Source: Macrostomum hystrix (lineage: Eukaryota > Animalia > Platyhelminthes). Taken from it: a stretch of 64,000 nt of DNA. Shown here in pieces: positions 33,005 through 54,260 of this stretch. A model generated the notes under the pieces. The model saw only the letters and a list, made by a program, of their open reading frames with translations, did not search any database and was not told where the DNA came from. The stretch covers positions 124,001 to 188,000 of the forward strand of contig CATNEN010000002.1 in NCBI GenBank assembly GCA_950097015.1, written 5' to 3'. Each line of letters starts with the position of its first letter. Within the stretch, counting starts at the first letter, position 1. Made by a program: the position numbers and the translations under genes.

Positions 33005-36000
33005 ACAGAGTTTGAATCATGGCTAAACCAGAGTCTGAATCATGGCTAAACCAGAGTTTGAATAATGGCTACACCAGAGTTTGAATCATGGCTAAACCAG
33101 ATCTTGAATCATGGCTAAACTAGAGTTTGAATCATGGCTAAACCAGAGTCTGAATCATGGCTAAACCAGCGTCTGAATCATGGCTAAAGCAGAGTTTGAA
33201 TCATGGCTAAACCAGAGTCTGAATCATGGCTTAACCAGAGTTTGAATCATGGCTAAACCAGAGTTTGAATCATGGCTAAACCAGAGTTTGAATCATGGCT
33301 AAACCAGATCTTGAATCATGGCTAAACTAGAGTTTGAATCATGGCTAAACCAGAGTCTGAATCATGGCTAAACAAGCGTCTGAATCATGGCTAAAGCAGA
33401 GTTTGAATCATGGCTAAACCAGAGTCTGAATCATGGCTTAACCAGAGTTTGAATCATGGCTAAACCAGAGTTTGAATCATGGCTAAACCAGAGTTTGAAT
33501 CATGGCTAAACCAGAGTTTGAATCATGGCTAAACCAGAGTTTGAATCATGGCTAAACCAGAGTCTGAATCATGGCTAAACCAGAGTTTGAATCATGGCTA
33601 AACCAGAGTCTGAATCATGGCTTAACCAGAGTTTGAATCATGGCTAAACCAGAGTTTGAATCATGGCTAAACCAGAGTCTGAATCATGGCTAAACCAGCG
33701 TCTGAATCATGGCTAAACCAGAGTTTGAATCATGGCTAAACCAGAGTCTGAATCATGGCTTAACTAGAGTTTGAATCATGGCTAAACCAGAGTCTGAATC
33801 ATGGCTAAACCAGCGTCTGAATCATGGCTAAAGCAGAGTTTGAATCATGGCTAAACCAGAGTCTGAATCATGGCTTAACCAGAGTTTGAATCATGGCTAA
33901 ACCAGAGTTTGAATCATGGCTAAACCAGAGTTTGAATCATGGCTAAACCAGAGTTTGAATCATGGCTAAACCAGAGTTTGAATCATGGCTAAACCAGAGT
34001 TTGAATCATGGCTAAACCAGAGTTTGAATCATGGCTAAACCAGAGTTTGAATCATGGCTAAACCAGAGTCTGAATCATGGCTAAACCAGAGTTTGAATCA
34101 TGGCTAAACCAGAGTCTGAATCATGGCTTAACCAGAGTTTGAATCATGGCTAAACCAGAGTTTGAATCATGGCTAAACCAGAGTCTGAATCATGGCTAAA
34201 CCAGCGTCTGAATCATGGCTAAACCAGAGTCTGAATCATGGCTAAACCATAGTCTGAATCATTGCTAAAATAGAGTCTGAATCATGGCTAAACCAGAGTC
34301 TGAATCATGGCTAAACCAGAGTCTGAATCATGGCTAAACTAGAGTCTGAATCATGGCTAAACCATAGTCTGAATCATTGCTAAAATAGAGTCTGAATCAT
34401 GGCTAAACCAGAGTCTGAATCATGGCTAAACCAGAGTCTGAATCATGGCTAAACCAGAGTCTGAATCATGGCTAAACCAGAGTCTGAATCATGGCTAAAC
34501 TAGAGTCTGAATCATGGCTAAACCAGAGTTTGAACCATGGCTAAACCAGAGTTTGAATCATGGCTAAACCAGCGTCTGAATCATGGCTAAACCAGCGTCT
34601 GAATCATGGCTAAACCAGAGTTTGAATCATGGCTAAACCAGAGTTTGAATATTGGCAACACCAGAGTTTGAATCATGGCTAAACCAGCGTCTGAATCATG
34701 GCTAAACCAGAGTTTGAATCATGGCTAAACCAGAGACTAAATCATGGCTAAACCATCATCATCAGCATGGCTAAACTAGAGTTTGAATCATGGCTAAACC
34801 ATCATCATCAGCATGGCTAAACTAGAGTTTGAATCATGGCTAAACCAGAGTTTGAATAATGGCTACACCAGAGTTTGAATCATGGCTAAACCAGATCTTG
34901 AATCATGGCTAAACTAGAGTTTGAATCATGGCTAAACCAGAGTCTGAATCATGGCTAAACCAGCGTCTGAATCATGGCTAAAGCAGAGTTTGAATCATGG
35001 CTAAACCAGAGTCTGAATCATGGCTTAACCAGAGTTTGAATCATGGCTAAACCAGAGTTTGAATCATGGCTAAACCAGAGTTTGAATCATGGCTAAACCA
35101 GATCTTGAATCATGGCTAAACTAGAGTTTGAATCATGGCTAAACCAGAGTCTGAATCATGGCTAAACCAGCGTCTGAATCATGGCTAAAGCAGAGCTTGA
35201 ATCATGGCTAAACCAGAGTCTGAATCATGGCTTAACCAGAGTTTGAATCATGGCTAAACCAGAGTTTGAATCATGGCTAAACCAGAGTTTGAATCATGGC
35301 TAAACCAGATCTTGAATCATGGCTAAACTAGAGTTTGAATCATGGCTAAACCAGAGTCTGAATCATGGCTAAACCAGCGTCTGAATCATGGCTAAAGCAG
35401 AGTTTGAATCATGGCTAAACCAGAGTCTGAATCATGGCTTAACCAGAGTTTGAATCATGGCTAAACCAGAGTTTGAATCATGGCTAAACCAGAGTTTGAA
35501 TCATGGCTAAACCAGAGTTTGAATCATGGCTAAACTAGAGTTTGAATCTTGGCTAAACCAGAGTCTGAATCATGGCTAAACCAGCGTCTGAATCATGGCT
35601 AAAGCAGAGTTTGAATCATGGCTAAACCAGAGTCTGAATCATGGCTAAACCAGAGTCTGAATCATGGCTAAACCAGAGTTTGAATCATGGCTAAACCAGA
35701 GTTTGAATCATGGCTTAACCAGAGTTTGTATCATGGCTAAACCAGAGTTTGAATCATGGCTAAACCAGAGTTTGAATCATGGCTAAACCAGAGTTTGAAT
35801 CATGGCTAAACCAGAGTTTGAGTCATGGCTAAACCAGAGTCTGAATCATGGCTAAACCAACGTTTGAATCATGGCTAACCTAGAGTCTGAATCATGGCTA
35901 AACCATAGTCTGAATCATTGCTAAAATAGAGTTTGAACCATGGCTAAACCAGAGTTTGAATCATGGCTAAACCAGCGTCTGAATCATGGCTAAACCAGCG

Positions 36001-36715
36001 TCTGAATCATGGCTAAACCAGAGTTTGAATCATGGCTAAACCAGAGTTTGAATATTGGCAACACCAGAGTTTGAATCATGGCTAAACCAGCGTCTGAATC
36101 ATGGCTAAACCAGAGTTTGAATCATGGCTAAACCAGAGACTAAATCATGGCTAAACCATCATCATCAGCATGGCTAAACTAGAGTTTGAATCATGGCTAA
36201 ACCATCATCATCAGCATGGCTAAACTAGAGTTTGAATCATGGCTAAACCAGAGTTTGAATAATGGCTACACCAGAGTTTGAATCATGGCTAAACCAGAGT
36301 CTGAATCATGGCTAAACTAGAGTTTGAATCATGGCTAAACCAGAGTTTGAATAATGGCTACACCAGAGTTTGAATCATGGCTAAACCAGAGTCTGAATCA
36401 TGGCTAAACCAGAGTTTGAATCTTGGCTAAACCAGAGTTTCAATCATGGCTAACCCAGCGTTTGAATCATGGCTAAACCAGAGTTTGAATCATGGCAAAA
36501 ACCGAGTTTCAATCATGGCTAACCCAGCGTTTGAATCATGGCTAAACCAGAGTTTGAATCATAGCCAACCAGAGTTTGAATCTTGGCTAAACCAGAGTTT
36601 GAATCATAGCCAACCAGAGTCTGAATCATGGCAAAACGAGAGTTTGAATCATAGCCCACCAGGGTTTAAAACATGGCGAAACCTGAGTTTGAATCTTGGC
36701 TAACCCAGCGTTTGA
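33005..36715. repeat. 23-bp satellite (AATCATGGCTAAACCAGAGTTTG), ~160 copies
   Basis: Direct tandem periodicity with recurring higher-order variant blocks. Confidence 0.96.
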
Positions 36716-36729
36716 AAAATCAACGTCAA

Positions 36730-37890
36730 CTGGGGAGTCATCATAAAAATGGGGATCATGGTGAACTGGGGGATCATGGTAAACTGGGGGATAATTGTCG
36801 ACTGGGGGATCATTGTCAACTGGGGGATCATTGTCAACTGGGGGATCATTGTCAACTGGGGGATCATTGTCAACTGGGGGATCATTGTCAAATGGGGGAT
36901 CATTGTCAACTGGGGGATCTTTGTCAACTGGGGGGTAATGGTCAACTGGGGGATAATTGTCAACTGGGGAATCATCATCAACTGGGGATCATCATCAACT
37001 GGGGGATCATTGAGAACTGGGGGATCTTTGTCAACTGGGGGATCATTGTGAACTGGGGGATCTTTGTCAACTGGGGGATCATTGTATACTGTGGGATCAT
37101 TGTCAACTGGGGGATCATTGTCAACTGGGGGATCATTGTCAACTGGGGGATCGTTGTCAACTGGGGGATCATTGTCAACTGGGGGAACATTGTCAACTGG
37201 AGGAACATTGTTAACTAGGGATCATCATCAATGGGGAGACTTCATCAACTGGGGGACCATTGTGAACTGGGGGATCTTTGTTAACTGGGGGATCATTGTC
37301 AACTGGGGGATCATTCTCAACTGGGGGATCATTGTCAACTGGGGGATCATTTTCAACTGGGGGATCATCATCAACTGGAGGATCATTGTCAACTGGGGGA
37401 TCATTGTCAACTGGGGGATCATTGTCAACTGGGGGATCATTGTCAACTGGGTGATCATCATCAACTGGGGGATCATTGTCAACTGGGGGAACATTGTCAA
37501 ATGGAGGAACATTGTTAACTGGGGATCATCATCAATGGGGAGACTTCATCAACTGGGGGATCATTGTGAACTGGGGGATCTTTGTTAACTGGGGGATCAT
37601 TGTCAACTGGGGGATCATTGTCAACTGGGGGATCATTTTCAACTGGGGGATCATCATCAACTGGGGGATCATCATCAACTGGGTGATCATTGTGAACTGG
37701 GGGATCTTTGTCAACTGGGGGATCATTGTCAACTGTGGGATCATTGTCAACTGGGGGATCATTGTCAAATGGGGGATCATTGTCAACTGGGGGATCGTTG
37801 TCAACTGGGGGTTCATTGTCAACTGGGGGTTCATTGTCAACTGGGGGATCATTGTCAACTGGGGGATCATTGTCAACTGGGGGTTCATTG
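36730..37890. repeat. 18-bp minisatellite (TCATTGTCAACTGGGGGA), ~64 copies
   Basis: Direct tandem periodicity; explains the IIVNWG/PQLTMI ORFs. Confidence 0.95.
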
Positions 37891-39059
37891 TAGCTTTAAA
37901 AAGCTGTAAATTCAGCTGCTAAAAAGTATATACTAGACGAATTAAAAGTATTTCTGCTCTCCGAAGGGGGGCAAAACTTGCTAGTTTACTTGCTCAAATT
38001 GATTCAAAAGTTACACCGACAGAATAAGGATATTCGCACAGAAAGCAATTATAGCGCGCTCACAGTGAAAAGCACAATTTGGTCTAACAAATTGGGTATA
38101 ACAATTTTACTTAAACTGGCCTAATCTGCGCCCTACTCTTCCCGAGAGGCTCCGGTTGTCTCTGCTTTCAGCGCTGCCCCGACAGATCCTATCGGTTGGC
38201 ACTCCTTCTGACTGACGGCGGAGTCTCCGAAGAGAGCACGTACTGACTTCGACAACAAGCGCCTATCTAGACCACCCTTGTCAGCGACGCACTCTCAAGA
38301 CGCGTAGCGCCGAAAGCTACCTAACTGAACAAGCGGAGCGTGGTCGGGCGGGGAGAGACAAAACAAAGTGGACTGGTTTGCACGTGCTTCTCACAGTGTG
38401 AGGCGAATTGCGGAGAACGATAAAAAGTCACTGCAATAAAACACGCTTCCTTTCATAGAGTCATTTTAACCCCAAATTAGGTCGATCGGCGAGGTGGATG
38501 CCTGGCTGTAGCTTGAGCCAAGGCGAAAAATCACAGTAGACTCGCGACTGCCGTTCTGAGCCCCGGGGTCGCTTCTTGCCGAGGGTCGACAGGTAGTGAG
38601 GCCGGGTCGCTCGCTGATTGGTCGGGACTGTAGCCCAGGGGTAGCGCTCGCGGGGTGGTGGGCGTCCGCTCCCCCCGGCTGGTCCGGCCCGGCTTGGCGT
38701 GGGTGACTTTTAGCTAAAAAAATTGAAAATTTTCATCAGTGAATCCAGGCTAGCCCAATTTGCAAATTGACAAATGCTAAATTTAACAGCCCATCTGCCT
38801 ACAGTCCGCCAAGTAAGTGTACTCTTCTATTCATCAATCAATCAGACACTCCTGGGTAGTAGACGGCACTGTACTCTGTACTCTCATTTGAAAACAGAAA
38901 ACAAATTGAACAAACTTTCTGAGCAAGTCAGATCCCGGAGTAGCAGTTGACTCGCGGCAACCTGCCTCCGCCAGTACAAAGAGGCAGTTGCTATAGTTAC
39001 TATGTGCGAACGGCCTTCTCTCTGCTCAAACCGACAGCCAATCCTCCACTGTCAAAATG

Positions 39060-39185
39060 CAGTAAAATTCCCGATTTTCCCATATCTCAACGTTGTTTCC
39101 AGAACTCTATGAGGAGATCTAGAAATGACAGACAGAAACACACACACACACAGACAAACAGCACCTGAAAATAACTATATTTAGA
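39060..39185 (-). mobile_element. Possible 5' end of a different Helitron-like element
   Basis: Minus strand reads A|TCTAAATATAGTTATTTT followed by a TGTC/TG microsatellite, the layout of Helitron 5' ends; no matching 3' end identified. Confidence 0.3.
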
Positions 39186-39204
39186 TAGAATTACTAGAAG
39201 GATC

Positions 39205-40995
39205 AATGAGACCCGGGAGAGTTAAGACACGGGAGAGATGAGACACGGGAGAGATGAGACACGGGAGAGATGAGACCCGGGAGAGATGAGACACGGGAGA
39301 GATGAGACACGGGAGAGATTAGGCACGGGAGAGATGAGGCACGGGAGAGATGAGACACGGGTGAGATGAGATACGGGAGAGATGAGACATAGGAGAGATG
39401 AGGCACGGGAGAGATGAGACACGGGAGAAATGAGACACGGGAGAGATGAGACACGGGTGAGATGAGATACGGGAGAGATGAGACATAGGAGAGATGAGGC
39501 ACGGGAGAGATGAGACACGGGAGAGATGAGACACGGGAGAGATGAAATACGGGTGAGATGAGATACGGGAGAGATGAGACATAGGAGAGATGAGACACGG
39601 GAGAGATGAGACACGGGAGAGATGAGACACGGGAGAGATGAGATACGGGAGAGATGAGATACGGGTGAGATGAGATACGGGAGAGATGAGACACGGGAGA
39701 GATGAGACACGGGAGAGATGAGACACGGGAGAGATGAAATACGGGTGAGATGAGACACGGGAGAGATGAGGCACGGGAGAGATGAGACACGGGAGTGATG
39801 AAATACGGGTGAGATGAGATACGGGAGAGATGAGACATAGGAGAGATGAGGCACGGGAGAGATGAGACACGGGAGAGATGAGACACGGGAGAGATGAAAT
39901 ACGGGTGAGATGAGATACGGGAGAGATGAGACATAGGAGAGATGAGGCACGGGAGAGATGAGGCACGGGAGAGATGAGACACGGGAGAGATGAGATACGG
40001 GAAAGATGAGTCATAGGAGAGACGAGATACGGGAGAGATGAGACACGGGAGAGATGAGATACGGGAAAGATGAGTCATAGGAGAGACGAGATACGGGAGA
40101 GATGAGACAGGGGAGAGATGAGGCACGGGAGAGATGAGGCACGGGAGAAATGAGACACGGGAGAGTTAAGACACGGGAGAGATGAAATACGGGTGAGATG
40201 AGATACGGGAGAGATGAGGCACGGGAGAGATGAGACACGGGAGAGATGAAATACGGGTGAGATGAGATACGGGAGAGATGAGACATAGGAGAGATGAGGC
40301 ACGGGAGAGATGAGACACGGGAGAGATGAGACACGGGAGAGATGAGACACGGGAGAGATGAGATACGGGAGAGATGAGATACGGGTGAGATGAGATACGG
40401 GAGAGATGAGACACAGGAGAGATGAGACACGGGAGAGATGAGACACGGGAGAGATGAGACACGGGAGAGATGAGGCACGGGAGAGATGAGACACGGGAGA
40501 GATGAGACACAGGAGAGATGACACACGGGAGAGATGAGACACGGGAGAGATGAGACACGGGAGAGATGAGACACGGGAGAGATGAGACACGGGAGAGATG
40601 AGACACGGGAGAGATGAGACACGGGAGAGATGAGACACGGGTGAGATGAGATACGGGAGAGATGAGACATAGGAGAGATGAGGCACGGGAGAGATGAGAC
40701 ACGGGAGAGATGAGACACGGGAGAGATGAAATGCGGGTGAGATGAGATACGGGAGAGATGAGACATAGGAGAGATGAGACACGGGAGAGATGAGACACGG
40801 GAGAGATGAGACACGGGAGAGATGAAATACGGGTGAGATGAGATACGGGAGAGATGAGACATAGGAGAGATGAGGCACGGGAGAGATGAGACACGGGAGA
40901 GATGAGACACGGGAGAGATGAGACAGGGGAGAGATGAGACACGGGTTTTGATGAGATACGGGTGAGATGATATACGGGAGAGATGAGACATAGAT
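39205..40995. repeat. 16-bp minisatellite (GAGATGAGACACGGGA), ~110 copies
   Basis: Direct periodicity; the 16-aa repeat ORFs equal 3 x 16 bp. Confidence 0.96.
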
Positions 40996-41837
40996 TAGAT
41001 GAGGCATTTAAAAGTGACGAAAAAAGTTAAGGGGCATTGGATATTTAGTCCATTCGAGCGATATTAGGCCATGAAGCTGTAAGTTCTACTCACAAGTAGT
41101 AAGATATCGTATTTAAGCTTGGCTTCAATTCAGTTTTTCTAGTTTTAATTTTTTAGTTTTGTTGCATTTCTATGAGCAAGCTCAAGCTTATAGCATTAAA
41201 AAAGTGAAAATGTCCTTTGTAATAAATTTTAGCAATATTTCCATGCAGAAACTTATCGTTAAATGTGAAATTCAGCGTGATGGCTTTCTGAATCTTGTGG
41301 TAATGAGTGTTCAGTGACCACAAATAGTCCTTTGAGTGCTACTCAGAGCTACACAAGCCGACTAGTCAACCCGAAAGCGACCAGCCAACCGAAAATCAAT
41401 GCAGCTGCAATCGATACTTCTGAAAATTTGAATTCTTCTGTTAAAATATTAGGCTTTTTTCAGTGACAGTCGAATGTTGCACATCTTTCCACAACTAGTC
41501 AGTGATATGCTTGTCTGTGAGTTTTAAGCTGTGGCTTACTGTGGTCCAACATTGAAGAGAACCATTTCCTTAACAACGGACCTCCTTATTAGGCAGGAAG
41601 CCATTAATAAAATATTTATCACCGGCCAGTTAGTATTTGTCCTAAAACTGTAAGGCCACTCACATGGCTCGCACTTTTATTAATTTTTTACAGAGGTTTA
41701 GTCACTTTCTGAGCAGACAATAAGTGGAGTGGAGTACTTCTCTGAGTGCTTCGTTCGGCTTTGCATTTTAAACTACTTCAACTTAGACTCAACTGACGAG
41801 TTCCCACGGACTGATGGGAAAGATCAGGAATGAGAGT

Positions 41838-42800
41838 TGCAATCCATCAGACTGGGTGAGTTTCAATCCATCAGACTGGGTGAGTTTCAATCCATCAGAC
41901 TGGGTGAGTTTCAATCCATCAGACTGGGTGAGTTTCAATCCATTAGACTCGGTGAGTTTCAATCCATCAGACTGGGTGAGTTATAATCCATCAGACTGGG
42001 TGAGTTTCAATCCATCAGACTGGGTGAGTTTCAATCCGTTAGACTGGGTGAGTTTCAATCCATCAGACTGGGTGAGTTATAATCCATCAGACTGGGTGAG
42101 TTATAATCCAATAGACTGGGTGAGTTTCAATCCATCAGACTGGGTGAGTTTCAATCCATCAGACTGGGTGAGTTATAATCCATCAGACTGGGTGAGTTAT
42201 AATCCATCAGACTGGGTGAGTTATAATCCATCAGACTGGGTGAGTTATAATCCATCAGACTGGGTGAGTTTCAATCCATCAGACTGGGTGAGTTTCAATC
42301 CATTAGACTGGGTGAGTTTCAATCCATCAGACTGGGTGAGTTATAATCCATCAGACTGGGTGAGTTATAATCCAATAGACTGGGTGAGTTTCAATCCATC
42401 AGACTGGGTGAGTTTCAATCCATCAGACTGGGTGAGTTTCAATCCATCAGACTGGGTGAGTTTCAATCCATCAGACTGGGTGAGTTTCAATCCATCAGAC
42501 TGGGTGAGTTTCAATCCATCAGACTGGGTGGGTTTCAATCCATCAGACTGGGTGAGGTTCAATCCATTAGACTGGGTGAGTTTCAATCCATCAGACTGGG
42601 TGAGTTATAATCCAATAGACTGGGTGAGTTTCAATCCATCAGACTGGGTGAGTTATAATCCAATAGACTGGGTGAGTTTCAATCCATCAGACTGGGTGAG
42701 TTTCAATCCATCAGACTGGGTGAGTTTCAATCCATCAGACTGGGTGAGTTTCAATCCATCAGACTGGGTGAGTTTCAATCCATCAGACTGGGTGAGTTTC
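41838..42800. repeat. 24-bp minisatellite (AATCCATCAGACTGGGTGAGTTTC), ~40 copies
   Basis: Direct periodicity (FNPSDWVS pseudo-ORF). Confidence 0.95.
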
Positions 42801-43499
42801 ATTATTCATAATTTCCCCTGCAGAATGATGGATTCACATTGCGGGGCAGGTGTTGTTAGCAAATACTTTGTCTTCCTTACATTGCCAATGTCAAATCTTT
42901 CTTTGACGCGATTCAGTACCTTAGTTTCCAAGCTTTGAGAACACTCAAGACATGCCTATTGTTCTCAACGCATCCCTATAAATGGCATTTTTATTCGTGT
43001 TGCAACTAGAGAATATTTCTTTTCCCATTGTGGCGAATGGTTGGGAGTGAAGCTCACGGGAGACAAAATTGTCCTATTGACAAGCAAATGCAGTTTTTTC
43101 AGACCCGACTAAAAGCAGTTTTTGTCTCTTCTGTCCGTGCACTGTTGGCTTTTTGCAGGATTTTCCTAGATTCCGTTACTTTCGTCGAAACGTCTTCATC
43201 TTCTGTTCATTTTTGGCTGAGTAAGAAAAAAAATATAACTGCCGACGATAGACAATAGCCTGTTTTTGTTTAACTGAGTATTTTAAGATTAAAAAAAATA
43301 CCTTTTGGAGCTTATTCTAGGGCTTAATTTGATTTTTAATTGTCTAGCTTAAGCTTATATTTACCTTGCTTTTGTGTTTTGGTTGTGCCATGACATTTAT
43401 ACATTTATACGCTGCAATGAATCAGAAATAGACTCAAACCATTCGTGATTGGGCGCAAAAGTCGAGATTGTAGTTCATTGTGAAACTATAGTTTGAGAT

Positions 43500-44085
43500 T
43501 AAGTGAGATTTTGTGAGCTTGAATGAGAGGTTGAGATTGATTAAGTTTTTGTGAGACTGAATGAGAGTTAGGTTGAGATTGGGTGAGATTTTGTGAGACT
43601 GAATGAAAGTTAGGTTGAGATTTAGTGAGATTTTGTGAGACTGAATGAGAGTCAGTTTGAGATTGGGTGAGATTTTGTGAGACTGAATGAGATTTAGGTT
43701 GAGATTGATCGGGAGATTTTGTGAGACTGAATGAGAGTTTGTTTGAGATTGAGTGAGATTTTGTGAGACTGAATGAGATTTAGGTTGAGATTGAGTGAGA
43801 GTTTGTGAGACTGAATGAGAGTTAGGTTGAGATTGGGTGAGATTTTGTGAGACTGAATGAAAGTTAGGTTGAGATTTAGTGAGATTTTGTGAGACTGAAT
43901 GAGAGTCAGTTTGAGATTGGGTGAGATTTTGTGAGACTGAATGAAAGTTAGGTTGAGATTTAGTGAGATTTTGTGAGACTGAATTAGAGTCAGTTTGAGA
44001 TTGGGTGAGATTTTGTGAGACTGAATTAGAGTCAGTTTGAGATTGGGTGAGATTTTGTGAGACTGAATCAGAGTTAGTGTGTGAT
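43500..44085. repeat. ~42-bp minisatellite (GAGATTTTGTGAGACTGAATGAGAGTTAGGTTGAGATTGGGT), ~14 copies
   Basis: Direct periodicity with internal TGAGA sub-repeats. Confidence 0.9.
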
Positions 44086-44841
44086 TAAGTGATTATAGAA
44101 TTATTAGAATGATTGGCAGATAAAAACATTGACATAAACATCTAGCATTAACTATGAGTTACTAAGAATAGATATACTCAAGCAAAAAACACAATCAGCT
44201 TCAGATTTTCGAGTTTTCCTACAGACTGACATAGAGGCAAGGCAGGTACTCAAGAATACTGTAATTTAGATTTAAGATCTTCAGGACTCGGAAGGAATAA
44301 ATCGTGAATAATGACTTTCAAAGAATCCGAAATGACGTGGATAATTTTCCGTATTCTAACTCAAGCGATGCCTCACACACACTGAAGCCTCATTATTTTT
44401 GCTCAGGCTTTCGATACTTTTTTTTGCTCGAAATGAGGATCTGAGTTGTCAAGCAGTATAGATTTTTGCTTTACTTTTCCCACAAAGAAAGGGTCTCATC
44501 ATTAGGCTGCAGACGGGCAAGCTGGATTTTGACTTTGACAACAAGAATTGGCGCATAGAAAGACACTTATTGCATATAGAGAAGCATCAACTTCAGAGTT
44601 GATGTCGCGCAGACTAAATAAGTGCAAGGTGCGTGTGAGCTGGCAGACACAGCTGTCAGTTCAGACAATTAGTAAGCGGAACGGTAGGAGACAGGTAAAA
44701 ATACTGGATTGTTTCATCGATTGTCTTCAAATCAAGTGGCTTCAGCTCTTAGTTGCTCATTCTTCTGCTTCTAGGAGGCAACCAAGGGGCTGGCATCAGA
44801 AAGAGGTGAAAGTTTCTGCTTAGTGGCTAAAACCAGGTCTC

Positions 44842-44910
44842 ATTGGTTAGGACGAGGCTGATTGGACGCTGACGAAAGCGGATTGGATAAGCCAGCTGAA
44901 GGCTATATAT
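44842..44910 (+). promoter_or_regulatory. Putative Pol II promoter of the prohormone gene
   Basis: Three inverted CCAAT boxes (ATTGG at 44842, 44861, 44882), a TGACG CRE half-site near 44870, and TATATAT at 44904-44910, 74 nt before GCCATG at 44984. Confidence 0.6.
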
Positions 44911-44983
44911 CAGATTGCATCAGGTGGTGCCTCTGGTCGCTTCACCAAACACTGAATTATTAGTAGATCAACAGACTGTCGCC

Positions 44984-47900
44984 ATGCCCATGGAGCTAGC
45001 TTCTGGCCAGTCGCCGTTGATGCTGCTGACGCTGCTGATGTCCCTGATGCTATCGGCGTCGGTCAACTCGAGTGTCAGGGCTGCCCCGGCAATGACTGCT
45101 GACGTTGAGCACGAATTGGATGAAGATGGTGAGAATTTTGGGCTTATCCCGAGTGCCTTTCGTCCGAAGAACGAGTTCCAAAAATCATGGAAAACAATCA
45201 AGTTGTCACACATTGTGTCTGCTACAGCAATAAAGTACTTCTATTCTATGGCCAAACTCCTTCATTCGAACAGATTTTGCCAAAAAAAACTATTTCCGGC
45301 TTGGCGCGAACAGATGGCAGCTTCACCTGTCATTGACTTCTTCCTATATTGACTTTTCTCTCTTTTAAATAGTTTTTTTCTAAGCCTAGATAGGGATCTG
45401 CGAAGGTTGGTTGAGACCTGACCATCTGGCTAGCTGATGGTCACTGAACTGACACTGGAATACAGAGTATGAAGCGGCTAGCAGAACTAATTTACTCAAT
45501 CCTTCACCTGTCTAAAAGGTGAAGAGGCTTGTGAGGCCTAAGTGGCTGCATCTGCGATCCCGGCCGTGCCTCTAGGGGAAGATACTTTTCTCAGGTGAAG
45601 CTCCTTCTGTGATTGATGTAATTATTCTCTAGTGACTGGGGAGCATTTGACACTGAATCATTCCGATCCGTGCTATCCTGCGCATATGAGTTACTGGAGA
45701 GCAGCCTGAGTAATTAGCACCTCGATTTTTTGCACTTTAATTTAAACTTTTGTAGCTAAAATTATTTTACGACACGAAGAAGTGGCATGTCTACATGTCA
45801 ATCTGTCTTCATGTCAACCTGTCTTCAAGTCAATCTGTCTTCATGTCAATCTGTCTTCATGTCAACCTGTCTTCAAGTCAATCTGTCTTCATGTCAATCT
45901 GTCTTCATGTCAACCTGTCTTCAAGTCAATCTGTCTTCAAGTCAATCTGTCTTCATGTCAATCTGTCTTCATGTCAACCTGTCTTCATGTCAATCTGTCT
46001 TCAAGTCAATCTGTCTTCATGTCAATCTGTCTTCATGTCAACCTGTCTTCAAGTCAATCTGTCTTCAAGTCAATCTGTCTTCATGTCAATCTGTCTTCAT
46101 GTCAATCTGTCTTCATGTCAACCTGTCTTCAAGTCAATCTGTCTTCATGTCAATCTGTCTTCATGTCAACCTGTCTTCAAGTCAATCTGTCTTCAAGTCA
46201 ATCTGTCTTCATGTCAATCTGTCTTCATGTCAACCTGTCTTCAAGTCAATCTGTCTTCAAGTCAATCTGTCTTCATGTCAATCTGTCTTCAAGTCAACCT
46301 GTCTTCAAGTCAATCTGTCTTCATGTCAATCTGTCAACCTGTCAAATCTGTCTACCTGTCAAATCTGTCTTCATGTCAATCTGTGCTCATGTCAATCTGT
46401 GCTCATGTCAATCTGTGCTCATGTCAATCTGTGCTCATGTCAATCTGTGCTCATGTCAATCTGTGCTCATGTCAATCTGTGCTCATGTCAATCTGTGCTC
46501 ATGTCAATCTGTGCTCATGTCAATCTGTGCTCATGTCAATTTGTGCTCATGTCAATCTGTGCTCATGTCAATCTGTGCTCATGTCAATCTGTGCTCATGT
46601 CAATCTGTGCTCATGTCAATCTGTGCTCATGTCAATCTGTGCTCATGTCAATCTGTGCTCATGTCAATCTGTGCTCATGTCAATTTGTGCTCATGTCAAT
46701 CTGTGCTCATGTCAATCTGTGCTCATGTCAATCTGTGCTCATGTCAATCTGTGCTCATGTCAATCTGTGCTCATGTCAATCTGTGCTCATGTCAATCTGT
46801 GCTCATGTCAATCTGTGCTCATGTCAATCTGTGCTCATGTCAATTCCAAAGCTTCGATACAGATCGATCCCATCCGACAGAAAATGTGTCAAACTCTTTC
46901 GGCTGAAAAAAGAATTTCTCTAAAAAACTGCCAATGATTCAGTGTCAGTTTGATGTTCGATTTCAGATCCGCTGAACGAGGCACTCCTGGAATCGGAGCC
47001 AGAACCTGCCGATGACAAACGCAGCCTCGGTGTGAAATCAATAATACCTTTTTCGTGTTCCCTTTTGATGTGGCAAAATCAAAAGACTCTTTGTTATTGC
47101 GCATTGCCAAACTGGTTGAATAAGAAAGCAAAGCCAACAAACTGATTTAGAACCGTCTTTTTAAGATACCTAATACAGCACCTACTACAGCCACCATTCA
47201 ATTTACAACTGCCTGCTGCAAACACCGAGAAGTACTGTAGATTACAATACTTCAGATATACAATTCATAAGTTTAGAAGAGACACACACAAGTCTCCTAC
47301 AGACAGTCATAAGTTTCCTACAGACAGTCATAAGTCTCCTACAGACACACAAAAGTCTCCTACAGACACACAAAAGTCTCCTACAGACACACAAAAGTCT
47401 CATACAGACACACAAAAGTCTCCTACAGACACACAAAAGTCTCCTACAGACACACAAAAGTCTCCTACAGACACACACAAGTCTCCTACAGACACACAAA
47501 AGTCTCCTACAGACACACAAAAGTCTCATACAGACACACACAAGTCTCCTACAGACAGTCATAAGTCTCCTACAGACACACACAAGTCTCCTACAGACAG
47601 TCATAAGTCTCCTACAGACACACAAAAGTCTCCTACAGACACACATAAGTCTCCTACAGTCAGTCATAAGTCTCCTACAGTCAGTCATAAGTCTCCTACA
47701 GACAGTCATAATTCTCCTACAGACACACAAAAGTCTCCTACAGACACACATAAGTCTCCTACAGTCAGTCATAAGTCCCCTACAGACAGTCATAAGTCTC
47801 CTACAGACACACAAAAGTCTCCTACAGACAGTCATAATTCTCCTACAGACACACAAAAGTCTCCTACAGACACACATAAGTCTCCTACAGTCAGTCATAA

Positions 47901-48744
47901 GTCTCCTACAGTCAGTCATAAGTCTCCTACAGACAGTCATAAGTCTCCTACAGACACACAAAAGTCTCCTACAGACACACAAAAGTCTCCTACAGACACA
48001 CACAAGTCTCCTACAGACAGTCATAAGTCCCCTACAGACAGTCATAAGTCTCCTACAGACAGTCATAAGTCTCCTACAGACAGTCATAAGTCTCCTACAG
48101 ACAGTCATAAGTCTCCTACAGACAGTCATAAGTCTCCTACAGACAGTCATAAGTCTCCTACAGTCAGTCATAAGTCTCCTACAGACAGTCATAAGTCTCC
48201 TACAGACACACAAAAGTCTCCTACAGACACACAAAAGTCTCCTACAGACACACACAAGTCTCCTACAGACAGTCATAAGTCCCCTACAGACAGTCATAAG
48301 TCTCCTACAGACAGTCATAAGTCTCCTACAGACAGTCATAAGTCTCCTACAGACAGTCATAAGTCTCCTACAGACAGTCATAAGTCTCCTACAGACAGTC
48401 ATAAGTCTCCTACAGACAGTCATAAGTCTCCTACAGACAGTCATAAGTCTCCTACAGACAGTCATAAGTCTCCTACAGACAGACGTAAGTCTCCTACAGA
48501 CAGACGTAAGTCTCCTACAGACAGACGTAATTCTCTTACAGACAAATCGTAAACCAATATCGTAAACATTATCGCCCACCGGGCACAATAAACAAGGATG
48601 CTCTCTCCCTATGCACTTTTCGTTTGCTTTTCAGAGGCTGTTTACCAGTTCGGTGGCCAGTTGTCGGAGAACGCGATTCCGTTTCGTCGACCCCCGCAGC
48701 CGCCGCCTCCACCGGGACCGCGATTGATTGGTCGGCGCCGTTAA
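44984..48744 (+). CDS. Secreted neuropeptide-type prohormone, 3 exons, 105 aa
   Basis: Exons 44984-45128, 46967-47029, 48635-48744 (318 nt, both introns phase 1, GT-AG). Protein: hydrophobic signal (LMLLTLLMSLMLSAS...VRA|AP), acidic spacer, KR, SLEAVYQFGGQLSENAIPFRRPPQPPPPPGPRLI, G-RRR-stop. Confidence 0.72.
45785..46845. repeat. 16-bp minisatellite, two domains (GTCAATCTGTCTTCAT then GTCAATCTGTGCTCAT), ~66 copies
   Basis: Direct periodicity; lies in prohormone intron 1. Confidence 0.95.
47275..48545. repeat. 21-bp minisatellite (AGTCTCCTACAGACAGTCATA), ~60 copies
   Basis: Direct periodicity; lies in prohormone intron 2. Confidence 0.95.
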
Positions 48745-49189
48745 AACTAAACTTCATAGCAACCAGAAACTTGGCCATAGAAACCGGGTGGTTGTCATTG
48801 GATACGCGGCGAAAAAAATTATTGATGTGACATAAAACGATTGAGTCTGTTTAAAATACGCTTTAGTTTGTGAGCAGGTTAAACTTGAAGCAAAAAACAA
48901 AACGACCGGCAAACTCATATTGAAACTGATGCTAGTATCTGAAATTGAAACTACCCGAATGCTAATAAATATTATGGATCACAATGAATACGCAACTGCT
49001 TCTTCTAGAATATGATTTAACTTGACATTTAATAATGGGATTCATTGACTCCTGATCGACTACATACTACTGATACTGCAGTAGTATGTAGCAGTTTGGT
49101 GTGTGTTTTTGCGTAAAAATAGCTGTGACTCGAGTACGTGCACATCAGACTCTGACACCAAAATCTCCAGAGATCATACGGGTTGCTGG

Positions 49190-49560
49190 CTGACAGTGGG
49201 GTTGTAGTCTGACAGTGGGGTTGTAGTCTGACAGTGGGGTTGTAGTCTGATAGTGGGGTTGTAGTCTGATAGTGGGGTTGTAGGCTGACAGTGGGGTTGT
49301 AGTCTGACAGTGGGGTTGTAGTCTGACAGTGGGGTTGTAGTCTGATAGTGGGGTTGTAGTCTGATAGTGGGGTTGTAGGCTGACAGTGGGGTTGTAGTCT
49401 GACAGTGGGGTTGTAGTCTGACAGTGGGGTTGTAGTCTGATAGTGGGGTTGTAGTCTGACAGTGGGGTTGTAGTCTGATAGTGGGGTTGTAGTCTGATAG
49501 TGGGGTTGTAGTCTGATAGTGGGGTTGTAGTCTGACAGTGGGGTTGTAGTCTGACAGTGG
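49190..49560. repeat. 19-bp minisatellite (TGACAGTGGGGTTGTAGTC), ~19 copies
   Basis: Direct periodicity; same unit as 52505-53275. Confidence 0.94.
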
Positions 49561-49644
49561 GATTGCAGGCTGATTGTACAGGTTGACAGGCTGATCAGCC
49601 TTAGAATGACACTATCTAGGAACATCTCCTGCTACGATTGTAGC

Positions 49645-50027
49645 TGTCAGTGTCAGTCAGTGTCAGTCAGTGTCAGTCAGTCAGTTTCAGTCAATCAGTT
49701 TCAGTTATTCAGTCAGTGTCAGTCAGTGTCAGTCAGTGTCAGTCAGTGTCAGTAAATGTCAGTCAGTGTCAGTCAGTGTCAAGTCAGTGTCAGTCAGTGT
49801 CAAGTCAGTGTCAGTCAGTGTCAGTCAGTGTCAGTAAATGTCAGTCAGTGTCAGTCAGTGTCAGTCAGTGTCAGTCAGTGTCAGTCAGTGTCAGTCAGTG
49901 TCAGTCAGTGTCAGTCAGTGTCAGTCAGTGTCAGTCAATGTCAGTCAGTGTCTGTCAGTGTCAATCAGTGTGTGTCAGTCAGTGTCAGTCAGTGTCAGTC
50001 AGTGTCAGTCAGTGTCAGTCAGTGTCA
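49645..50027. repeat. 10-bp repeat (TCAGTCAGTG), ~38 copies
   Basis: Direct periodicity. Confidence 0.94.
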
Positions 50028-50449
50028 GAGCACATTGTGCTAGAAATTTAAAATGCATCTATTGACTGTAGCTTAAATTGTGAATGGTGTCACATTATAA
50101 ATTCAAGAATTTCCCAGTGCAACTCAACTCACTCAACCCGCGCTTGAGAACACAAAGAGAGAGACGGAATAGAGACGGTGAGAAGTTGTAGAAGAGCTAA
50201 GAGAAATTCTTTGCAATGAGTCCTCTTTTTTAAGGACCACTCATTGTCATTTCCAACTATGCGTCGGAGAAGCACTATGAAAATGCACAATGAGTGCACA
50301 ATCAGAATTGAGTACAGAAGAATAGCTTAGAGGAGCGGGAGTTGTGGCAGCTGGCTCTAATGACTCACGGCCAAGCTGAAAGTCCCACAAAATTGATTAT
50401 AGCAGCACTTCTGACAGTCTAAGCCCTGAGCACTCACAGAGCTCTCCGC

Positions 50450-50640
50450 TTGAGCATTCCTGACAGCGTGAGCACTCCTGACAGCTTGAGCATTCCTGAA
50501 AGCTTGAGCACTCCTGACAGCTTGAGCACTCCTGACAGCTTGAGCACTCCTGACAGCTTGAGCACTCCTGACAGCTTGAGCACTCCTGACAGCTTGAGCA
50601 CTCCTGTCAGCTTGAGCATTCCTGCCAGCTTGAGCAATCC
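50450..50640. repeat. 18-bp minisatellite (CTCCTGACAGCTTGAGCA), ~10 copies
   Basis: Direct periodicity. Confidence 0.92.
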
Positions 50641-51012
50641 TTGCGACTGCGAGCTCCGTGTCCGTGAGCTGCTGGTGAGCACAAAGTTGCTCTTTAATTA
50701 TTCCACTGTTTCAATTTTTGGCCCCACAACGCACATTTTAGAGTTTTCTTTAACTTCTGACTACAGATTACTCAACCCGAGCTATCTGTAAAATACACCA
50801 CAGGTTAAAGGCCCCATCTGCACCCACCCCACTGAAACTCCACAGGTGTACATCAACACACAATCTTTGCAAAAGATTATAGTGTTGGTTTAAGGGAATG
50901 AGTATTCTCAGTGAGTGCGCAAATGCCCACTAATGAGTTTTAGCTTAAAGAACATTCCCATTTGCTCAACAGCATTTGCACCTGGTTTTTATACATTGCA
51001 CTGATTCCTCTC

Positions 51013-51157
51013 TATAAAAACAGCTTTTTTTCTTTGAAACCCCGTCAAGCTCGTTCACAGACAATTTTGTCATTCAAAGCATTCTGCTTCAGGCAAAAAT
51101 AACAAAAAGTAAGTAAAGCTTCATCACTCCGATCCTAACTAACTTTCATTACTGCAG
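51013..51157 (+). promoter_or_regulatory. TATA box and short 5'-UTR intron of the DNase II gene
   Basis: TATAAAAA at 51013-51020; GTAAGT donor at 51109, CTAAC branch point, TGCAG acceptor ending 51157, ATG at 51166. Confidence 0.6.
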
Positions 51158-51165
51158 GTCACAGC

Positions 51166-52404
51166 ATGCACTGTCAGTGTCTGATACTAGTTGCATTGCT
51201 GCTGCTTGGCACTTCAGCAGTGGCGCCCAGTGCATCGCCAGCCAACGCGAGCTTCTGTCAGGTCGTCAGCGCTATCGATGGCTGCTCTGAACTGGGGTGT
51301 GGTAGCTGCACGCCTCACACGTTGCCATTAAAGGCGCGCTCTGACAAATTTAAAGGCGTTGCTAGTGCCCAACAATCGAAAACCTCAAGTTCCAGCGATG
51401 CTGTAGCAGACAAACAGCAAGTATCGGGTCTGCAGGATTCTTCCCAAGTGACTGCAGCCAGCAGTCAGAGTGTCACCGACAGCAATCATGCTTCACAAAA
51501 CTTCAGCTGCAAAGTTAATGAGAGAGAAGAAATAGACTGGTTCATAGCCATCAAGAGGCCTGGATCACATGAGCATGCTTACATTTCTACGAACAATAAG
51601 AACAATTGGATACATGCTGGTGACATCACAAGCAAAGGACCTGTGTTCGAAACTCTGAACCAGGCACTCCGGTCTCCAGATTTCGCAGACGCCTACAGTG
51701 ATAAACCCCCTAATGAAACACACAAACGAAAATACGGCCATCTGAAGGGTCTGTTCATGTTCGGCCAGTCCTCCGGCTTCTGGATGATGTACTCGGCGAG
51801 GAACTATCCAAAGTTTGAAAATGGAGGTCTTCATCAGGATGCAACACATGCGCAGTCGTTTATTTGTATCTCAGCTTCGAATACAGAGCTAACTAATCTA
51901 GCTCAAAGCTTAAGCCTCGCAAAGCCGCGATACTATCGTGGTGATGTACCAGCTGCAAATTCGAATCGAAATATTTCTGTCCATCAGTTGAAATCAAAAT
52001 CTGATAAATTATTTAAAGTCTTCATCAAACCCAAGAACAGCCCTAGAGAATGTATCTATCAGAGAATTCGACAGGAGTATAACAATGGCTTCCGCGTGCA
52101 GTCCTGGCTTAGAACGAATCCAACAGAACGATCTGCTGACGAGAATGACGTCACTAATATCGAGAGTATCAGAATGAATGTTAAAAGATCAACCGACCAG
52201 TCTAGACCCGACTTATGGCAGTGGAACACCAATAACGACCATTCCAAGTGGTGTGTTTCTAACAACATAAATCAAGCGCCCATGATAGTCTGCCTCTCCG
52301 ACCTCAACCGTAACAAAGAGCATCTCAAACAGGGCGGGGCAGCGGTCTGTCTGTCTATTCCCGATGTGTGGAGAGCATTCAATGCACTGCCACCTTTAAA
52401 CTAA
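51166..52404 (+). CDS. Deoxyribonuclease II family protein (secreted/lysosomal), divergent, 412 aa
   Basis: Signal peptide; DNase II motifs SCK...IDWFIAIKRP, YSDKPP, GHLKG (HxK 1), GFWMMYS, QSFIC, FRVQSW, DHSKW (HxK 2), CLSDLNR...GGAAVC. Intronless CDS. Confidence 0.85.
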   Translation: MHCQCLILVALLLLGTSAVAPSASPANASFCQVVSAIDGCSELGCGSCTPHTLPLKARSDKFKGVASAQQSKTSSSSDAVADKQQVSGLQDSSQVTAASSQSVTDSNHASQNFSCKVNEREEIDWFIAIKRPGSHEHAYISTNNKNNWIHAGDITSKGPVFETLNQALRSPDFADAYSDKPPNETHKRKYGHLKGLFMFGQSSGFWMMYSARNYPKFENGGLHQDATHAQSFICISASNTELTNLAQSLSLAKPRYYRGDVPAANSNRNISVHQLKSKSDKLFKVFIKPKNSPRECIYQRIRQEYNNGFRVQSWLRTNPTERSADENDVTNIESIRMNVKRSTDQSRPDLWQWNTNNDHSKWCVSNNINQAPMIVCLSDLNRNKEHLKQGGAAVCLSIPDVWRAFNALPPLN

Positions 52405-52504
52405 AAGCCCAACCGAAAATTTTGATTTCAGCTCGGTTGTTTAATTAAAGATTAAAAACATAATCAATACAATATGCTATTTGGCAAAACTGAAGTTTAG
52501 TTGA

Positions 52505-53275
52505 AGGCTGATTGTGGAGTTGTAGTCTGACAGTGGTGTTGTAGACTGACAGTGGGGTTGTAGTCTGACAGTGGTGTTGTAGACTGACAGTGGGGTTGTA
52601 GTCTGACAGTGGGGTTGTAGTCTGACAGTGGGGTTGTAGTCTGACAGTGGGGTTGTAGTCTGACAGTGGTGTTGTAGACTGAGAGTGGGGTTGTAGTCTG
52701 ACAGTGGGGTTGTAGTCTGACAGTGGGGTTGTAGTCTGACAGTGGTGTTGTAGACTGACAGTGGGGTTGTAGTCTGAGAGTCGGGTTGTAGTCTGACAGT
52801 GGGGTTGTAGTCTGACAGTGGGGTTGTAGTCTGACAGTGGTGTTGTAGACTGACAGTGGGGTTGTAGTCTGAGAGTCGGGTTGTAGTCTGACAGTGGGGT
52901 TGTAGTCTGAGAGTGGGGTTGTAGTCTGACAGTGGGGTTGTAGGCTGACAGTGGGGTTGTAGTCTGACAGTGGGGTTGTAGGCTGACAGTGGGGTTGTAG
53001 TCTGACAGTGGGGTTGTAGTCTGACAGTGGGGTTGTAGTCTGACAGTGGTGTTGTAGACTGACAGTGGGGTTGTAGTCTGACAGTGGGGTTGTAGTCTGA
53101 CAGTGGGGTTGTAGTCTGACAGTGGTGTTGTAGACTGACAGTGGGGTTGTAGTCTGAGAGTGGGGTTGTAGTCTGACAGTGGGGTTGTAGTCTGACAGTG
53201 GGGTTGTAGTCTGACAGTGGGGTTGTAGGCTGACAGTGGGGTTGTAGGCTGACAGTGGGGTTGTAAGCTGATTGT
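52505..53275. repeat. 19-bp minisatellite (TGACAGTGGGGTTGTAGTC), ~40 copies
   Basis: Direct periodicity; same family and orientation as 49190-49560. Confidence 0.95.
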
Positions 53276-53629
53276 GGGATTTGATTTGATTTTCTAACAG
53301 ATGGATATTTCATGATTTTTCATAACATTGTTACTTTTTTAAGCAATGATTACTAGTCTTCAGTAAGTCATTAAGTGTGGTAAAGGAATCAATTGTTTTA
53401 TTATGCTCTCTATTTCTTTCTTGTTAATTTTAATGGCTAAAGAATAGCATACTAATTAATTGTATACAGGGCTCACTGAGTTATTATTGTTATTGTTTAT
53501 TATTGTTATTATTGCTTTTATTCAATATAGTTCTGCTTTCAAAAATTCTGTTTTCAGCTCTTATTTCTTTACATAATCAGTGCAGAATTGGATCAGAATT
53601 GGAACCAAATTGGAACACCATTGGAAGAG

Positions 53630-54260
53630 TGCCTGGTAGAGTGGCAGTGTCTGGTAGAGGGGCGGTATCTGGTAGAGGGGCGGTATCTGGTAGAGTGGCA
53701 GTATCTGGTAGAGGGGCGGTATCTGGTAGAGTGGCAGTATCTGGTAGTGGCAGTGTCTGGTAGAGTGGCAGTATCTGATAGAGTGGCAGAATCTGGTAGA
53801 GTGGCAGTATCTGGTAGAGTGGCAGTATCTGGTAGAGGGGCGGTATCTGGTAGAGTGGCAGTATCTGGTAGTGGCAGTGTCTGGTAGAGGGGCAGTATCT
53901 GATAGAGGGGCGGTATCTGGTAGAGTGGCAGTATCTGATAGAGGGGCGGTATCTGGTAGAGTGGCAGTATCTGGCAGAGTGGCAGTATCTGGTAGAGTGG
54001 CAGTGCCGGGTAGAGTGGCAGTGCCTGGTAGAGTGGCAGTATCTGGTAGAGTGGCAGTATCTGGTAGAGTGGCAGTATCTGATAGAGGGGCGGTATCTGG
54101 TAGAGTGGCAGTATCTGGTAGAGTGGCAGTGCCTGGTAGAGTGGCAGTGCCTGGTAGAGTGGCAGTATCTGGTAGAGTGACAGTATCTGGTAGAGTGGCA
54201 GTGCCTGGTGGCAGTATCTGGTAGAGGGGCAATGCCTGGTAGAATGGCAGTATCTGGCAG
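53630..54260. repeat. 18-bp minisatellite (GGTAGAGTGGCAGTATCT), ~35 copies
   Basis: Direct periodicity. Confidence 0.94.

What the first reader, a model, noticed from the sequence alone, without database searches (positions are those of the whole stretch)
44984..48744. Cryptic three-exon neuropeptide prohormone predicted to yield a 34-aa amidated, proline-rich peptide
Seen: three small exons separated by satellite-filled introns splice in phase into signal peptide - acidic spacer - KR - SLEAVYQFGGQLSENAIPFRRPPQPPPPPGPRLI - G-RRR-stop, behind a CCAAT x3/CRE-half/TATA promoter. Established: dibasic convertase cleavage plus C-terminal Gly-basic amidation (PC/CPE/PAM). Inference: the mature peptide is SLEAVY...PGPRLI-NH2; the internal RR is followed by Pro, so it is probably not cut. 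I do not recognise the family (not NPY/F RPRFamide, not FxPRLamide), and ORF-based annotation would miss exons 2-3.
Basis: partly seen in the sequence, partly recalled or inferred. Interest (0 to 1): 0.8.

Follow-up and report, generated by a model that had tools for sequence, protein, structure and literature searches.

The report
Conserved flatworm amidated-peptide precursor gene
This is a real, spliced and transcribed three-exon gene of a Macrostomum flatworm for a small secreted precursor. It should release one 34-residue amidated, proline-rich signalling peptide that is strongly conserved in M. lignano but belongs to no described family; it is a solid but ordinary kind of discovery.

Summary
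Exons 44984-45128, 46967-47029 and 48635-48744 have GT-AG borders and join in frame (318 nt, 105 codons plus stop).

- **RNA evidence.** A 569-nt contig of public run X1 covers exon 2 exactly. It continues on one side into the end of exon 1 and on the other into the start of exon 3, so both predicted junctions are confirmed.
- **Species and copy number.** The genome's size and contig count match the published Macrostomum hystrix assembly. The gene is single-copy there.
- **Relatives.** An exhaustive search with exon 3 found only Macrostomum lignano proteins (Mlig016995 g1-g3, named "hypothetical"/"Secreted protein"). They have the same three exons and intron phases.
- **Conservation.** Synonymous sites between the two species are saturated (pS about 0.7-0.8). 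The KR site, the first 24 residues of the peptide and the closing R-L-I-G-RR(R)-stop are kept (exon 3 pN 0.12). The signal peptide and spacer have diverged. This is the signature of a processed bioactive peptide.
- **Family.** It has no Pfam family. It fails the defining features of NPY/NPF, PRXamide, calcitonin/DH31 and flatworm I/L-amides.
- **Not shown.** The peptide itself, its amidation, neuronal expression and a receptor.
- **Earlier scan notes.** The scan had not noted this on other DNA.

Verdict: a new member of a known kind, of moderate interest.

The parts
44842..44909 (+). Putative core promoter: three inverted CCAAT boxes (ATTGG at 44842, 44861, 44882), a TGACG half-CRE at 44870 and TATATA at 44904
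   Evidence: Motif positions. An ATTGG-21/22 nt-TATA pair is also present in M. lignano (L003 2939/2960), where annotated transcripts start about 30-40 nt after the TATA. Function was not tested; the other motifs are not evidently conserved.
44984..45128 (+). Exon 1 (coding part). It encodes the start codon, a signal peptide (hydrophobic core at residues 12-23, likely cleavage after VRA at residue 33, i.e. 45082) and the start of the acidic spacer. The 5' UTR start is unknown; the RNA contig reaches about 44977.
   Evidence: Translation. Hydrophobicity and the -3/-1 rule. VRA|AP is conserved in M. lignano. The X1 contig overhang equals the end of exon 1.
45129..46966 (+). Intron 1 (GT..AG, phase 1), holding a 16-mer minisatellite at 45788-46844
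   Evidence: It is skipped in the X1 contig.
46967..47029 (+). Exon 2: the rest of the acidic spacer, the dibasic KR site (47017-47022) and the first two residues (S, L) of the predicted peptide
   Evidence: Translation. It is the only open frame. The X1 contig covers it exactly with 0 mismatches. KR-SL is conserved in M. lignano.
47030..48634 (+). Intron 2 (GT..AG, phase 1), holding a 21-mer minisatellite at 47290-48544
   Evidence: It is skipped in the X1 contig.
48635..48744 (+). Exon 3, coding part: residues 3-34 of the predicted peptide (to Ile at 48727-48729), the amidation-donor Gly (48730-48732), RRR (48733-48741) and TAA (48742-48744)
   Evidence: Translation. The X1 overhang equals the start of exon 3. 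It is 85% identical to M. lignano, with pN 0.12 against pS 0.74.
48745..48988 (+). 3' UTR, with the only AATAAA at 48964-48969. The end is estimated from the length of the contig.
   Evidence: The contig has 354 nt beyond exon 2, which is 110 nt of exon 3 plus about 244 nt. AATAAA position. The 3' end is estimated, not observed.

Best explanation
This is a single-copy, TATA-driven, three-exon gene of a Macrostomum flatworm (most likely M. hystrix). It encodes a 105-residue preprohormone. The predicted steps, all inferred from established knowledge of the regulated secretory pathway, are as follows.
1. The signal peptide takes the protein into the ER and is removed, probably after VRA (residue 33).
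2. In secretory granules a PC2/PC1-type convertase cuts after the KR that ends the acidic spacer.
3. A carboxypeptidase E-type enzyme removes the C-terminal RRR.
4. PHM and PAL turn the exposed Gly into an amide.

The product is one 34-residue peptide, encoded by 47023-47029 plus 48635-48729. It has a conserved N-terminal half and a polyproline C-terminal half that ends in R-L-I-amide. The internal RR is followed by Pro-Pro and probably stays uncut. The peptide most likely acts as a neuropeptide or peptide hormone through an unknown receptor.

Shown here: the exons, the splicing, transcription, and the orthology and pattern of selection. Inferred: every processing step, amidation, the cell type and the receptor.
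For: - Splicing and transcription. The X1 contig joins exon 1, exon 2 and exon 3 exactly as predicted. No retrocopy exists in the genome that could mimic this, since exon 1 and exon 3 each match one place only.
- Orthologues. M. lignano Mlig016995 g1-g3 have the same three exons, both introns in phase 1 and the same architecture, and end in RLIG-RR-TGA.
- Selection. Exon 3 has pN 0.12 against pS 0.74 (Fisher p about 3e-9). Its first 21 codons have pN 0.07 against pS 0.84. Exon 1 has pN 0.42 and exon 2 pN 0.27. The loci do not align at the DNA level at all. The three M. lignano copies differ in signal peptide and spacer but not in the peptide.
- Secretion. A 12-residue hydrophobic core is followed by a conserved VRA|AP. 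UniRef names the M. lignano protein 'Secreted protein'.
- Processing enzymes. The genome holds convertase P-domains and copper type II monooxygenase domains. PC2 is neuronal and essential in M. lignano (PMC4490696).
- Language-model neighbours. The nearest clusters of the M. lignano protein are almost all peptide-hormone precursors: DH31, PDH, NPFF, gastrin/CCK, UTS2B and NMU. This is a lead only.
Against: - No peptide, amide, cell type or receptor was observed.
- The RNA support is one contig (word depth about 6) in one run, and that run's RNA label is the tool's guess.
- Only two species are available, so the conservation test has one pairwise comparison.
- The n-region of the signal peptide carries no positive charge in this species.
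- PF01082 is shared with dopamine/tyramine beta-hydroxylases, so PHM itself was not singled out.
- The joined 105-residue product was not sent to any predictor or search, so no SignalP- or NeuroPred-type score exists.
Confidence: 0.72

Rival explanations
1. The precursor is processed as described, but the peptide is not neuronal. It would be a secreted product of gland, gut, epidermal or reproductive cells, for example a proline-rich host-defence peptide or a mating-related peptide.
For: The C-terminal half is Pro/Arg-rich and follows an acidic E-P-E-P-type spacer. From my own knowledge, this recalls apidaecin-type and PR-39-type proline-rich antimicrobial peptides. No expression site is known (no tool result).
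Against: The net charge is only about +2. The peptide core is nearly invariant although synonymous sites are saturated. Reproduction-related genes of Macrostomum are reported to evolve fast (title and abstract of PMC7336406), and host-defence peptides generally do so too (my knowledge). The language-model neighbours are hormone precursors.
Confidence: 0.17
2. The mature products differ from the prediction: the internal RR is also cut. This would give a 19-residue N-terminal peptide and a 13-residue polyproline peptide ending in R-L-I-amide.
For: RR is a formal dibasic site, and it is conserved in both species.
Against: Pro at P1' (here Pro-Pro) blocks or strongly disfavours convertase cleavage. 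This is established knowledge; for example, the RRP in neurotensin stays intact. Conservation of F-R-R-P-P-Q fits equally well with a receptor-contact motif.
Confidence: 0.12
3. It is a very diverged member of a known bilaterian family, most plausibly a calcitonin/DH31-type or other family-B-receptor ligand.
For: The three nearest language-model clusters are arthropod DH31 precursors (0.92-0.93). The architecture is the same: signal peptide, spacer, KR, one peptide of about 31-35 residues, then Gly-basic.
Against: The shared features number 155-164, below the 170 typical of true family members. Only 3 of the 10 best hits share that family. The peptide ends in Ile-amide, not Pro-amide. No Pfam hit was found, although the DH31 model PF27927 is not in the local library, so no profile test was possible.
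Confidence: 0.07
4. It is a small secreted protein that is not proteolytically processed; the KR site and the G-RRR end are coincidental.
For: No direct evidence of cleavage exists.
Against: KR and Gly-basic-stop are both kept across a divergence that has saturated synonymous sites. Conservation is concentrated exactly between them, while the spacer diverges.
Confidence: 0.04

Closest known systems
Macrostomum lignano hypothetical proteins BOX15_Mlig016995g1/g2/g3 (NCBI) and UniProt A0A1I8HP56 'Secreted protein'
   Same: These are orthologues. They have three exons with introns at the same positions and phases, the VRA|AP site, the LNExLLESE spacer motif, KR, an identical 18-residue core (Q-F-G-G-Q-L-S-E-N-A-I-P-F-R-R-P-P-Q) and R-L-I-G-RR-stop.
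   Different: They are present in three copies rather than one. The signal peptide and spacer have diverged. The proline tract differs (Q-L-P-P-P-G-P-S-A against Q-P-P-P-P-P-G-P), giving 35 residues against 34, and the tail is RR rather than RRR. The UniProt entry carries a frameshifted tail. None is annotated as a neuropeptide.
Arthropod diuretic hormone 31 (calcitonin-like) precursors
   Same: The precursor architecture is the same, with a single amidated peptide of about 31-35 residues. They are the nearest clusters by language-model features.
   Different: DH31 ends in Pro-amide and has its own conserved core. No sequence alignment was obtained here, and the Pfam model was not available.
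PRXamide peptides (pyrokinin/CAPA/ETH/neuromedin U; planarian ppl-1, PMC2953531)
   Same: The M. hystrix peptide contains P-R-L near its amidated end.
   Different: The amide sits on an extra Ile (P-R-L-I-amide). The Pro is not kept in M. lignano (S-A-R-L-I). The peptide is long and present in one copy.
NPY/NPF family
   Same: The length is about 34-39 residues, with a proline-rich segment and C-terminal amidation.
   Different: Here the proline tract is at the C-terminal end, not the N-terminal end. There is no RxRF/Y-amide. An acidic spacer and a KR site separate the peptide from the signal peptide.
Flatworm I/L-amides (NPP-1 type; McVeigh et al. 2011, cited in PMC11196405)
   Same: Both are flatworm peptides ending in an amidated Ile or Leu close to an Arg.
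   Different: From my own knowledge, those are short F-V-R-I/L-amide peptides in several copies per precursor. This one is a single 34-residue peptide ending in R-L-I-amide. The paper itself is not held.

Membership tests
Amidated peptide prohormone (generic class) | N-terminal signal peptide | tested here: met
   The 12-residue hydrophobic core has a mean Kyte-Doolittle value of 2.57. VRA|AP fits the -3/-1 rule and is conserved. UniRef names the orthologue 'Secreted protein'. No SignalP run was made.
Amidated peptide prohormone (generic class) | Dibasic convertase site and C-terminal Gly followed by basic residues, both conserved in orthologues | tested here: met
   KR is kept in both species. 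The ends are G-RRR-stop here and G-RR-stop in M. lignano.
Amidated peptide prohormone (generic class) | Purifying selection concentrated on the mature peptide, with the spacer free to vary | tested here: met
   pN is 0.12 for exon 3 (0.07 for its first 21 codons), against 0.27 for exon 2 and 0.42 for exon 1. pS is 0.68-0.84 throughout.
Amidated peptide prohormone (generic class) | Mature amidated peptide detectable; expression in neurons or endocrine cells | not testable with these tools
   This needs mass spectrometry and in situ hybridisation.
NPY/NPF | C-terminal RxRF/Y-amide, with the peptide directly after the signal peptide | tested here: not met
   The peptide ends in R-L-I-Gly. A spacer of about 32 residues and a KR site precede it.
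PRXamide (pyrokinin/CAPA/ETH/NMU) | C-terminal P-R-X-amide (FXPRL-amide in pyrokinins) | tested here: not met
   The end is P-R-L-I-Gly here and A-R-L-I-Gly in M. lignano. The amidated residue lies one position beyond, and the Pro is not conserved.
Calcitonin/DH31 | C-terminal Pro-amide | tested here: not met
   The C-terminal residue before Gly is Ile in both species.
Calcitonin/DH31 | Match to the family profile (PF27927 DH2-like, PF00214) | tested here: inconclusive
   No Pfam match at E up to 10, but PF27927 is absent from the local library.
Mlig016995-type Macrostomum secreted peptide precursors (unnamed family) | Significant sequence match, the same exon-intron structure and the same processing sites | tested here: met
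   E = 4.9e-8 against 1.84 billion representatives with a 35-residue query at 85% identity. Exons and phases are the same.

The most novel reading that the evidence does not exclude
The peptide founds a neuropeptide family that is either specific to macrostomorphan flatworms or is a very diverged calcitonin/DH31-like ligand of a family-B receptor. In this reading, a rigid polyproline tail of variable length presents a conserved R-L-I-amide to the receptor.
Probability: 0.1. Interest if true: 0.5.

Novelty: new member of a known kind. Interest (0 to 1): 0.35.

Why it matters
Flatworm peptide signalling controls growth, regeneration and reproduction, and much of it runs on lineage-specific peptides that homology searches miss. 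This gene adds one well-supported candidate: it is spliced, transcribed and under strong purifying selection across the deepest split sampled in Macrostomum. M. lignano already offers RNAi, transgenesis and in situ methods, so the candidate can be tested at once. It also gives a functional hypothesis for three M. lignano genes now labelled "hypothetical". It does not change how prohormones are thought to work.

Tried and rejected
- **Reads over the whole locus.** As the tool advised, I laid the repeat-free part around exon 2 instead.
- **Runs X2 and X3.** X2 (sediment metatranscriptome) gave only a spurious 34-nt piece at 88% identity. X3 gave nothing on this part. Neither counts as support.
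- **Word search with exon 1.** I scored residues 1-48 of the unspliced 122-residue ORF so that full-length kin fell within the length window. It found nothing.
- **Pfam.** Scans of the three exon products and of the M. lignano proteins found nothing credible: PilX_N at E 0.13 and PRIMA1 at E 0.65.
- **Solved structures.** The PDB sequence search gave only chance matches to PsaH tails at E 0.06 or worse.
- **Other hits of the big search.** P0001, P0003 and P0005 are long, repetitive proline-rich proteins and were rejected.
- **Paralogues.** None were found in the own genome at E up to 10.
- **DNA-level comparison.** The locus does not align with the M. lignano locus at E up to 1e-3. The MAFFT promoter alignment is not trustworthy.
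- **Literature.** No paper holds 'Mlig016995' or 'RLIamide'. The peptide motifs are absent from Collins 2010, from a Schistosoma peptide paper and from the Taenia npp supplements.
- **Papers not held.** The key surveys by McVeigh 2009 and 2011 and Koziol 2016 are not held. A prior listing of the M. lignano peptide there cannot be excluded.
- **DH31 profile.** The test failed because PF27927 is not in the library.
- **Joined protein.** Searches were made exon by exon, and the full-length M. lignano proteins from the database served as proxies.
Full report
**What is in the sequence**

- Exon 1 (44984-45128) runs from ATG to GATG|gtgag.
- Exon 2 (46967-47029) lies between tttcag| and |gtgtga.
- Exon 3 (48635-48744) follows ttttcag| and ends in TAA.

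Their lengths (145 + 63 + 110 = 318 nt) keep one frame. The split codons read GAT (Asp) and GAG (Glu). Exon 2 and exon 3 are each open in only the predicted frame. The exon translations give these elements in order:
- a hydrophobic N-terminus;
- an acidic spacer that ends in KR;
- a 34-residue stretch, encoded by 47023-47029 plus 48635-48729;
- Gly, RRR and the stop codon.

Each intron carries a large minisatellite. One is a 16-mer of 66 copies at 45788-46844, the other a 21-mer of 60 copies at 47290-48544. Such arrays are common across this part of the window, and the M. lignano orthologue's introns also hold tandem repeats, of unrelated sequence. They look like a trait of these genomes, not of this gene.

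**Is it transcribed and spliced as predicted?**

Yes.
- The run search listed three runs that hold 5-8% of the sampled words of the locus.
I laid the repeat-free 436 bases around exon 2 instead.
- One 569-nt contig of run X1 lies on 46966-47029 without a mismatch.
- Its overhang on one side is the last 30 letters of exon 1 before the G that exon 1 and the intron end share.
- Its overhang on the other side is the first 30 letters of exon 3. I checked both.
- Exon 1 and exon 3 each occur once in the 220-Mb assembly. No genomic retrocopy could therefore have produced the joined form, and the contig is an mRNA.
- The contig has 151 letters before exon 2, so it starts about 7 nt upstream of the ATG.
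- It has 354 letters after exon 2, which puts its end near 48988, about 20 nt past the only AATAAA at 48964.
- The other two runs gave nothing usable.

**Whose genome**

Earlier scan notes call it a Macrostomum. I tested this in two ways.
- The only relatives of exon 3 are M. lignano proteins.
- The assembly's 220,453,370 bases in 42 contigs match the figures published for M. hystrix, about 220 Mb in 42 contigs (PMC10468722).

That paper describes an RNA-Seq-based annotation, which I could not inspect.

**Relatives**

- The word search with exon 1 found nothing, and Pfam found nothing.
- I then ran the exhaustive search of 1.84 billion representatives with the 35 residues of exon 3. It gave two true hits, both M. 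lignano. The other three hits are long, repetitive proline-rich proteins.
- A word search with the better hit added two more copies.
- The hits are NCBI BOX15_Mlig016995g1/g2/g3 ("hypothetical protein, partial") and UniProt A0A1I8HP56 ("Secreted protein").
- The genomic locus of one copy (L003) has three exons at L003 3064-3199, 6158-6217 and 10868-10977. Both introns are in phase 1 and lie at the same places in the protein. The reading frame ends R-L-I-G-R-R-TGA.

**Pattern of selection**

- Per-exon codon alignments show saturated synonymous change in all three exons (pS 0.68, 0.83 and 0.74).
- The loci do not align at all as DNA.
- Amino-acid change is graded: pN is 0.42 in exon 1, 0.27 in exon 2 and 0.12 in exon 3. 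It is 0.07 over the first 21 codons of exon 3.
- The excess of synonymous over non-synonymous change in exon 3 gives Fisher p of about 3e-9.
- These elements are kept:
  - VRA|AP at the end of the signal peptide;
  - a short LNExLLESE motif in the spacer;
  - the KR site;
  - S-L-E-A followed by an identical 18-residue core that includes R-R-P-P;
  - R-L-I-G-basic-stop at the end.
- These elements vary: the signal peptide, most of the spacer, and the exact make-up of the proline tract.
- The three M. lignano copies differ from one another only outside the peptide.
- This is the pattern expected for a precursor whose only constrained product is the peptide between KR and Gly.

**How it most likely works**

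The steps below are inferred from the well-established regulated secretory pathway.
1. Signal-peptide cleavage.
2. Convertase cleavage after KR.
3. Removal of the C-terminal Arg residues by a carboxypeptidase.
4. Conversion of the terminal Gly to an amide.

The genome carries convertase P-domains and copper monooxygenase domains of the PHM/DBH type. A neuronal PC2 is essential in M. lignano (PMC4490696). The internal RR is followed by Pro-Pro in both species, which should protect it from cleavage.

Strong conservation argues for a ligand of an endogenous receptor. It argues against a host-defence or mating peptide, since those classes evolve fast. Language-model neighbours of the M. lignano protein are nearly all peptide-hormone precursors; I treat this as a lead only.

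**Promoter**

In M. lignano an ATTGG lies 21 nt before a TATAAA, and the annotated transcripts start 30-40 nt after it. In this window the matching pair is ATTGG at 44882 and TATATA at 44904. The half-CRE and the two distal boxes are not evidently conserved.

**Comparison with known families**

The peptide fails the defining C-termini of three families:
- NPY/NPF (RxRF/Y-amide);
- PRXamides (here the amide sits one residue further on, and the Pro is not conserved);
- calcitonin/DH31 (Pro-amide).

It shares only a terminal amidated Ile with the short flatworm I/L-amides. A profile test against DH31 was impossible because PF27927 is not in the library.

I found no paper that names the gene or an R-L-I-amide peptide. 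However, the main flatworm neuropeptide surveys are not held.

**Limits**

- All searches were made exon by exon, by reference.
- Peptide, amidation, cell type and receptor remain untested.

**Verdict**

It is a new, so far genus-restricted member of the familiar class of amidated peptide precursors, and is of moderate interest.

Noticed in passing
window 490-6012 (+): A single uninterrupted 1841-residue ORF encodes the C-terminal motor part of a dynein heavy chain (AAA_7, AAA_8, MT stalk, AAA_9, D6). That is an unusually long intron-free stretch for this genome.
   Followed up: no
window 12030-13214 (-): A 394-residue ORF has a weak Mab-21_C (cGAS/Mab21-like) domain match at E 2e-6.
   Followed up: no
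window 20000-24700: A GC-rich block (58-59% against about 42% around it) carries PIF1-helicase ORFs at 22334-23365 and 23880-24662. It may be a Helitron-like mobile element.
   Followed up: no
window 51166-52401 (+): A 412-residue single-exon ORF has a full DNase II domain (E 2e-50). It is the next gene downstream of the peptide gene.
   Followed up: no
window 36000-54000: Minisatellite arrays are very dense here, with at least 12 arrays in 14 kb and periods of 10-42 nt, together with strong GC skew. The M. lignano orthologous locus is also full of tandem repeats, including a 2-kb CT run in intron 1, but of unrelated sequence.
   Followed up: partly
P0004 (UniProt A0A1I8HP56) against L003 10930-10977: The UniProt M. 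lignano entry departs from the three NCBI copies at the C-run of the proline tract and reads on into the 3' UTR. This fits a 1-nt loss and is probably an assembly error in the older genome.
   Followed up: partly
window 44850-48900, run X2: A sediment metatranscriptome held 7% of the sampled words of the locus. Only a spurious 34-nt piece lay on the part I could test. Where its words lie is unexplained.
   Followed up: no
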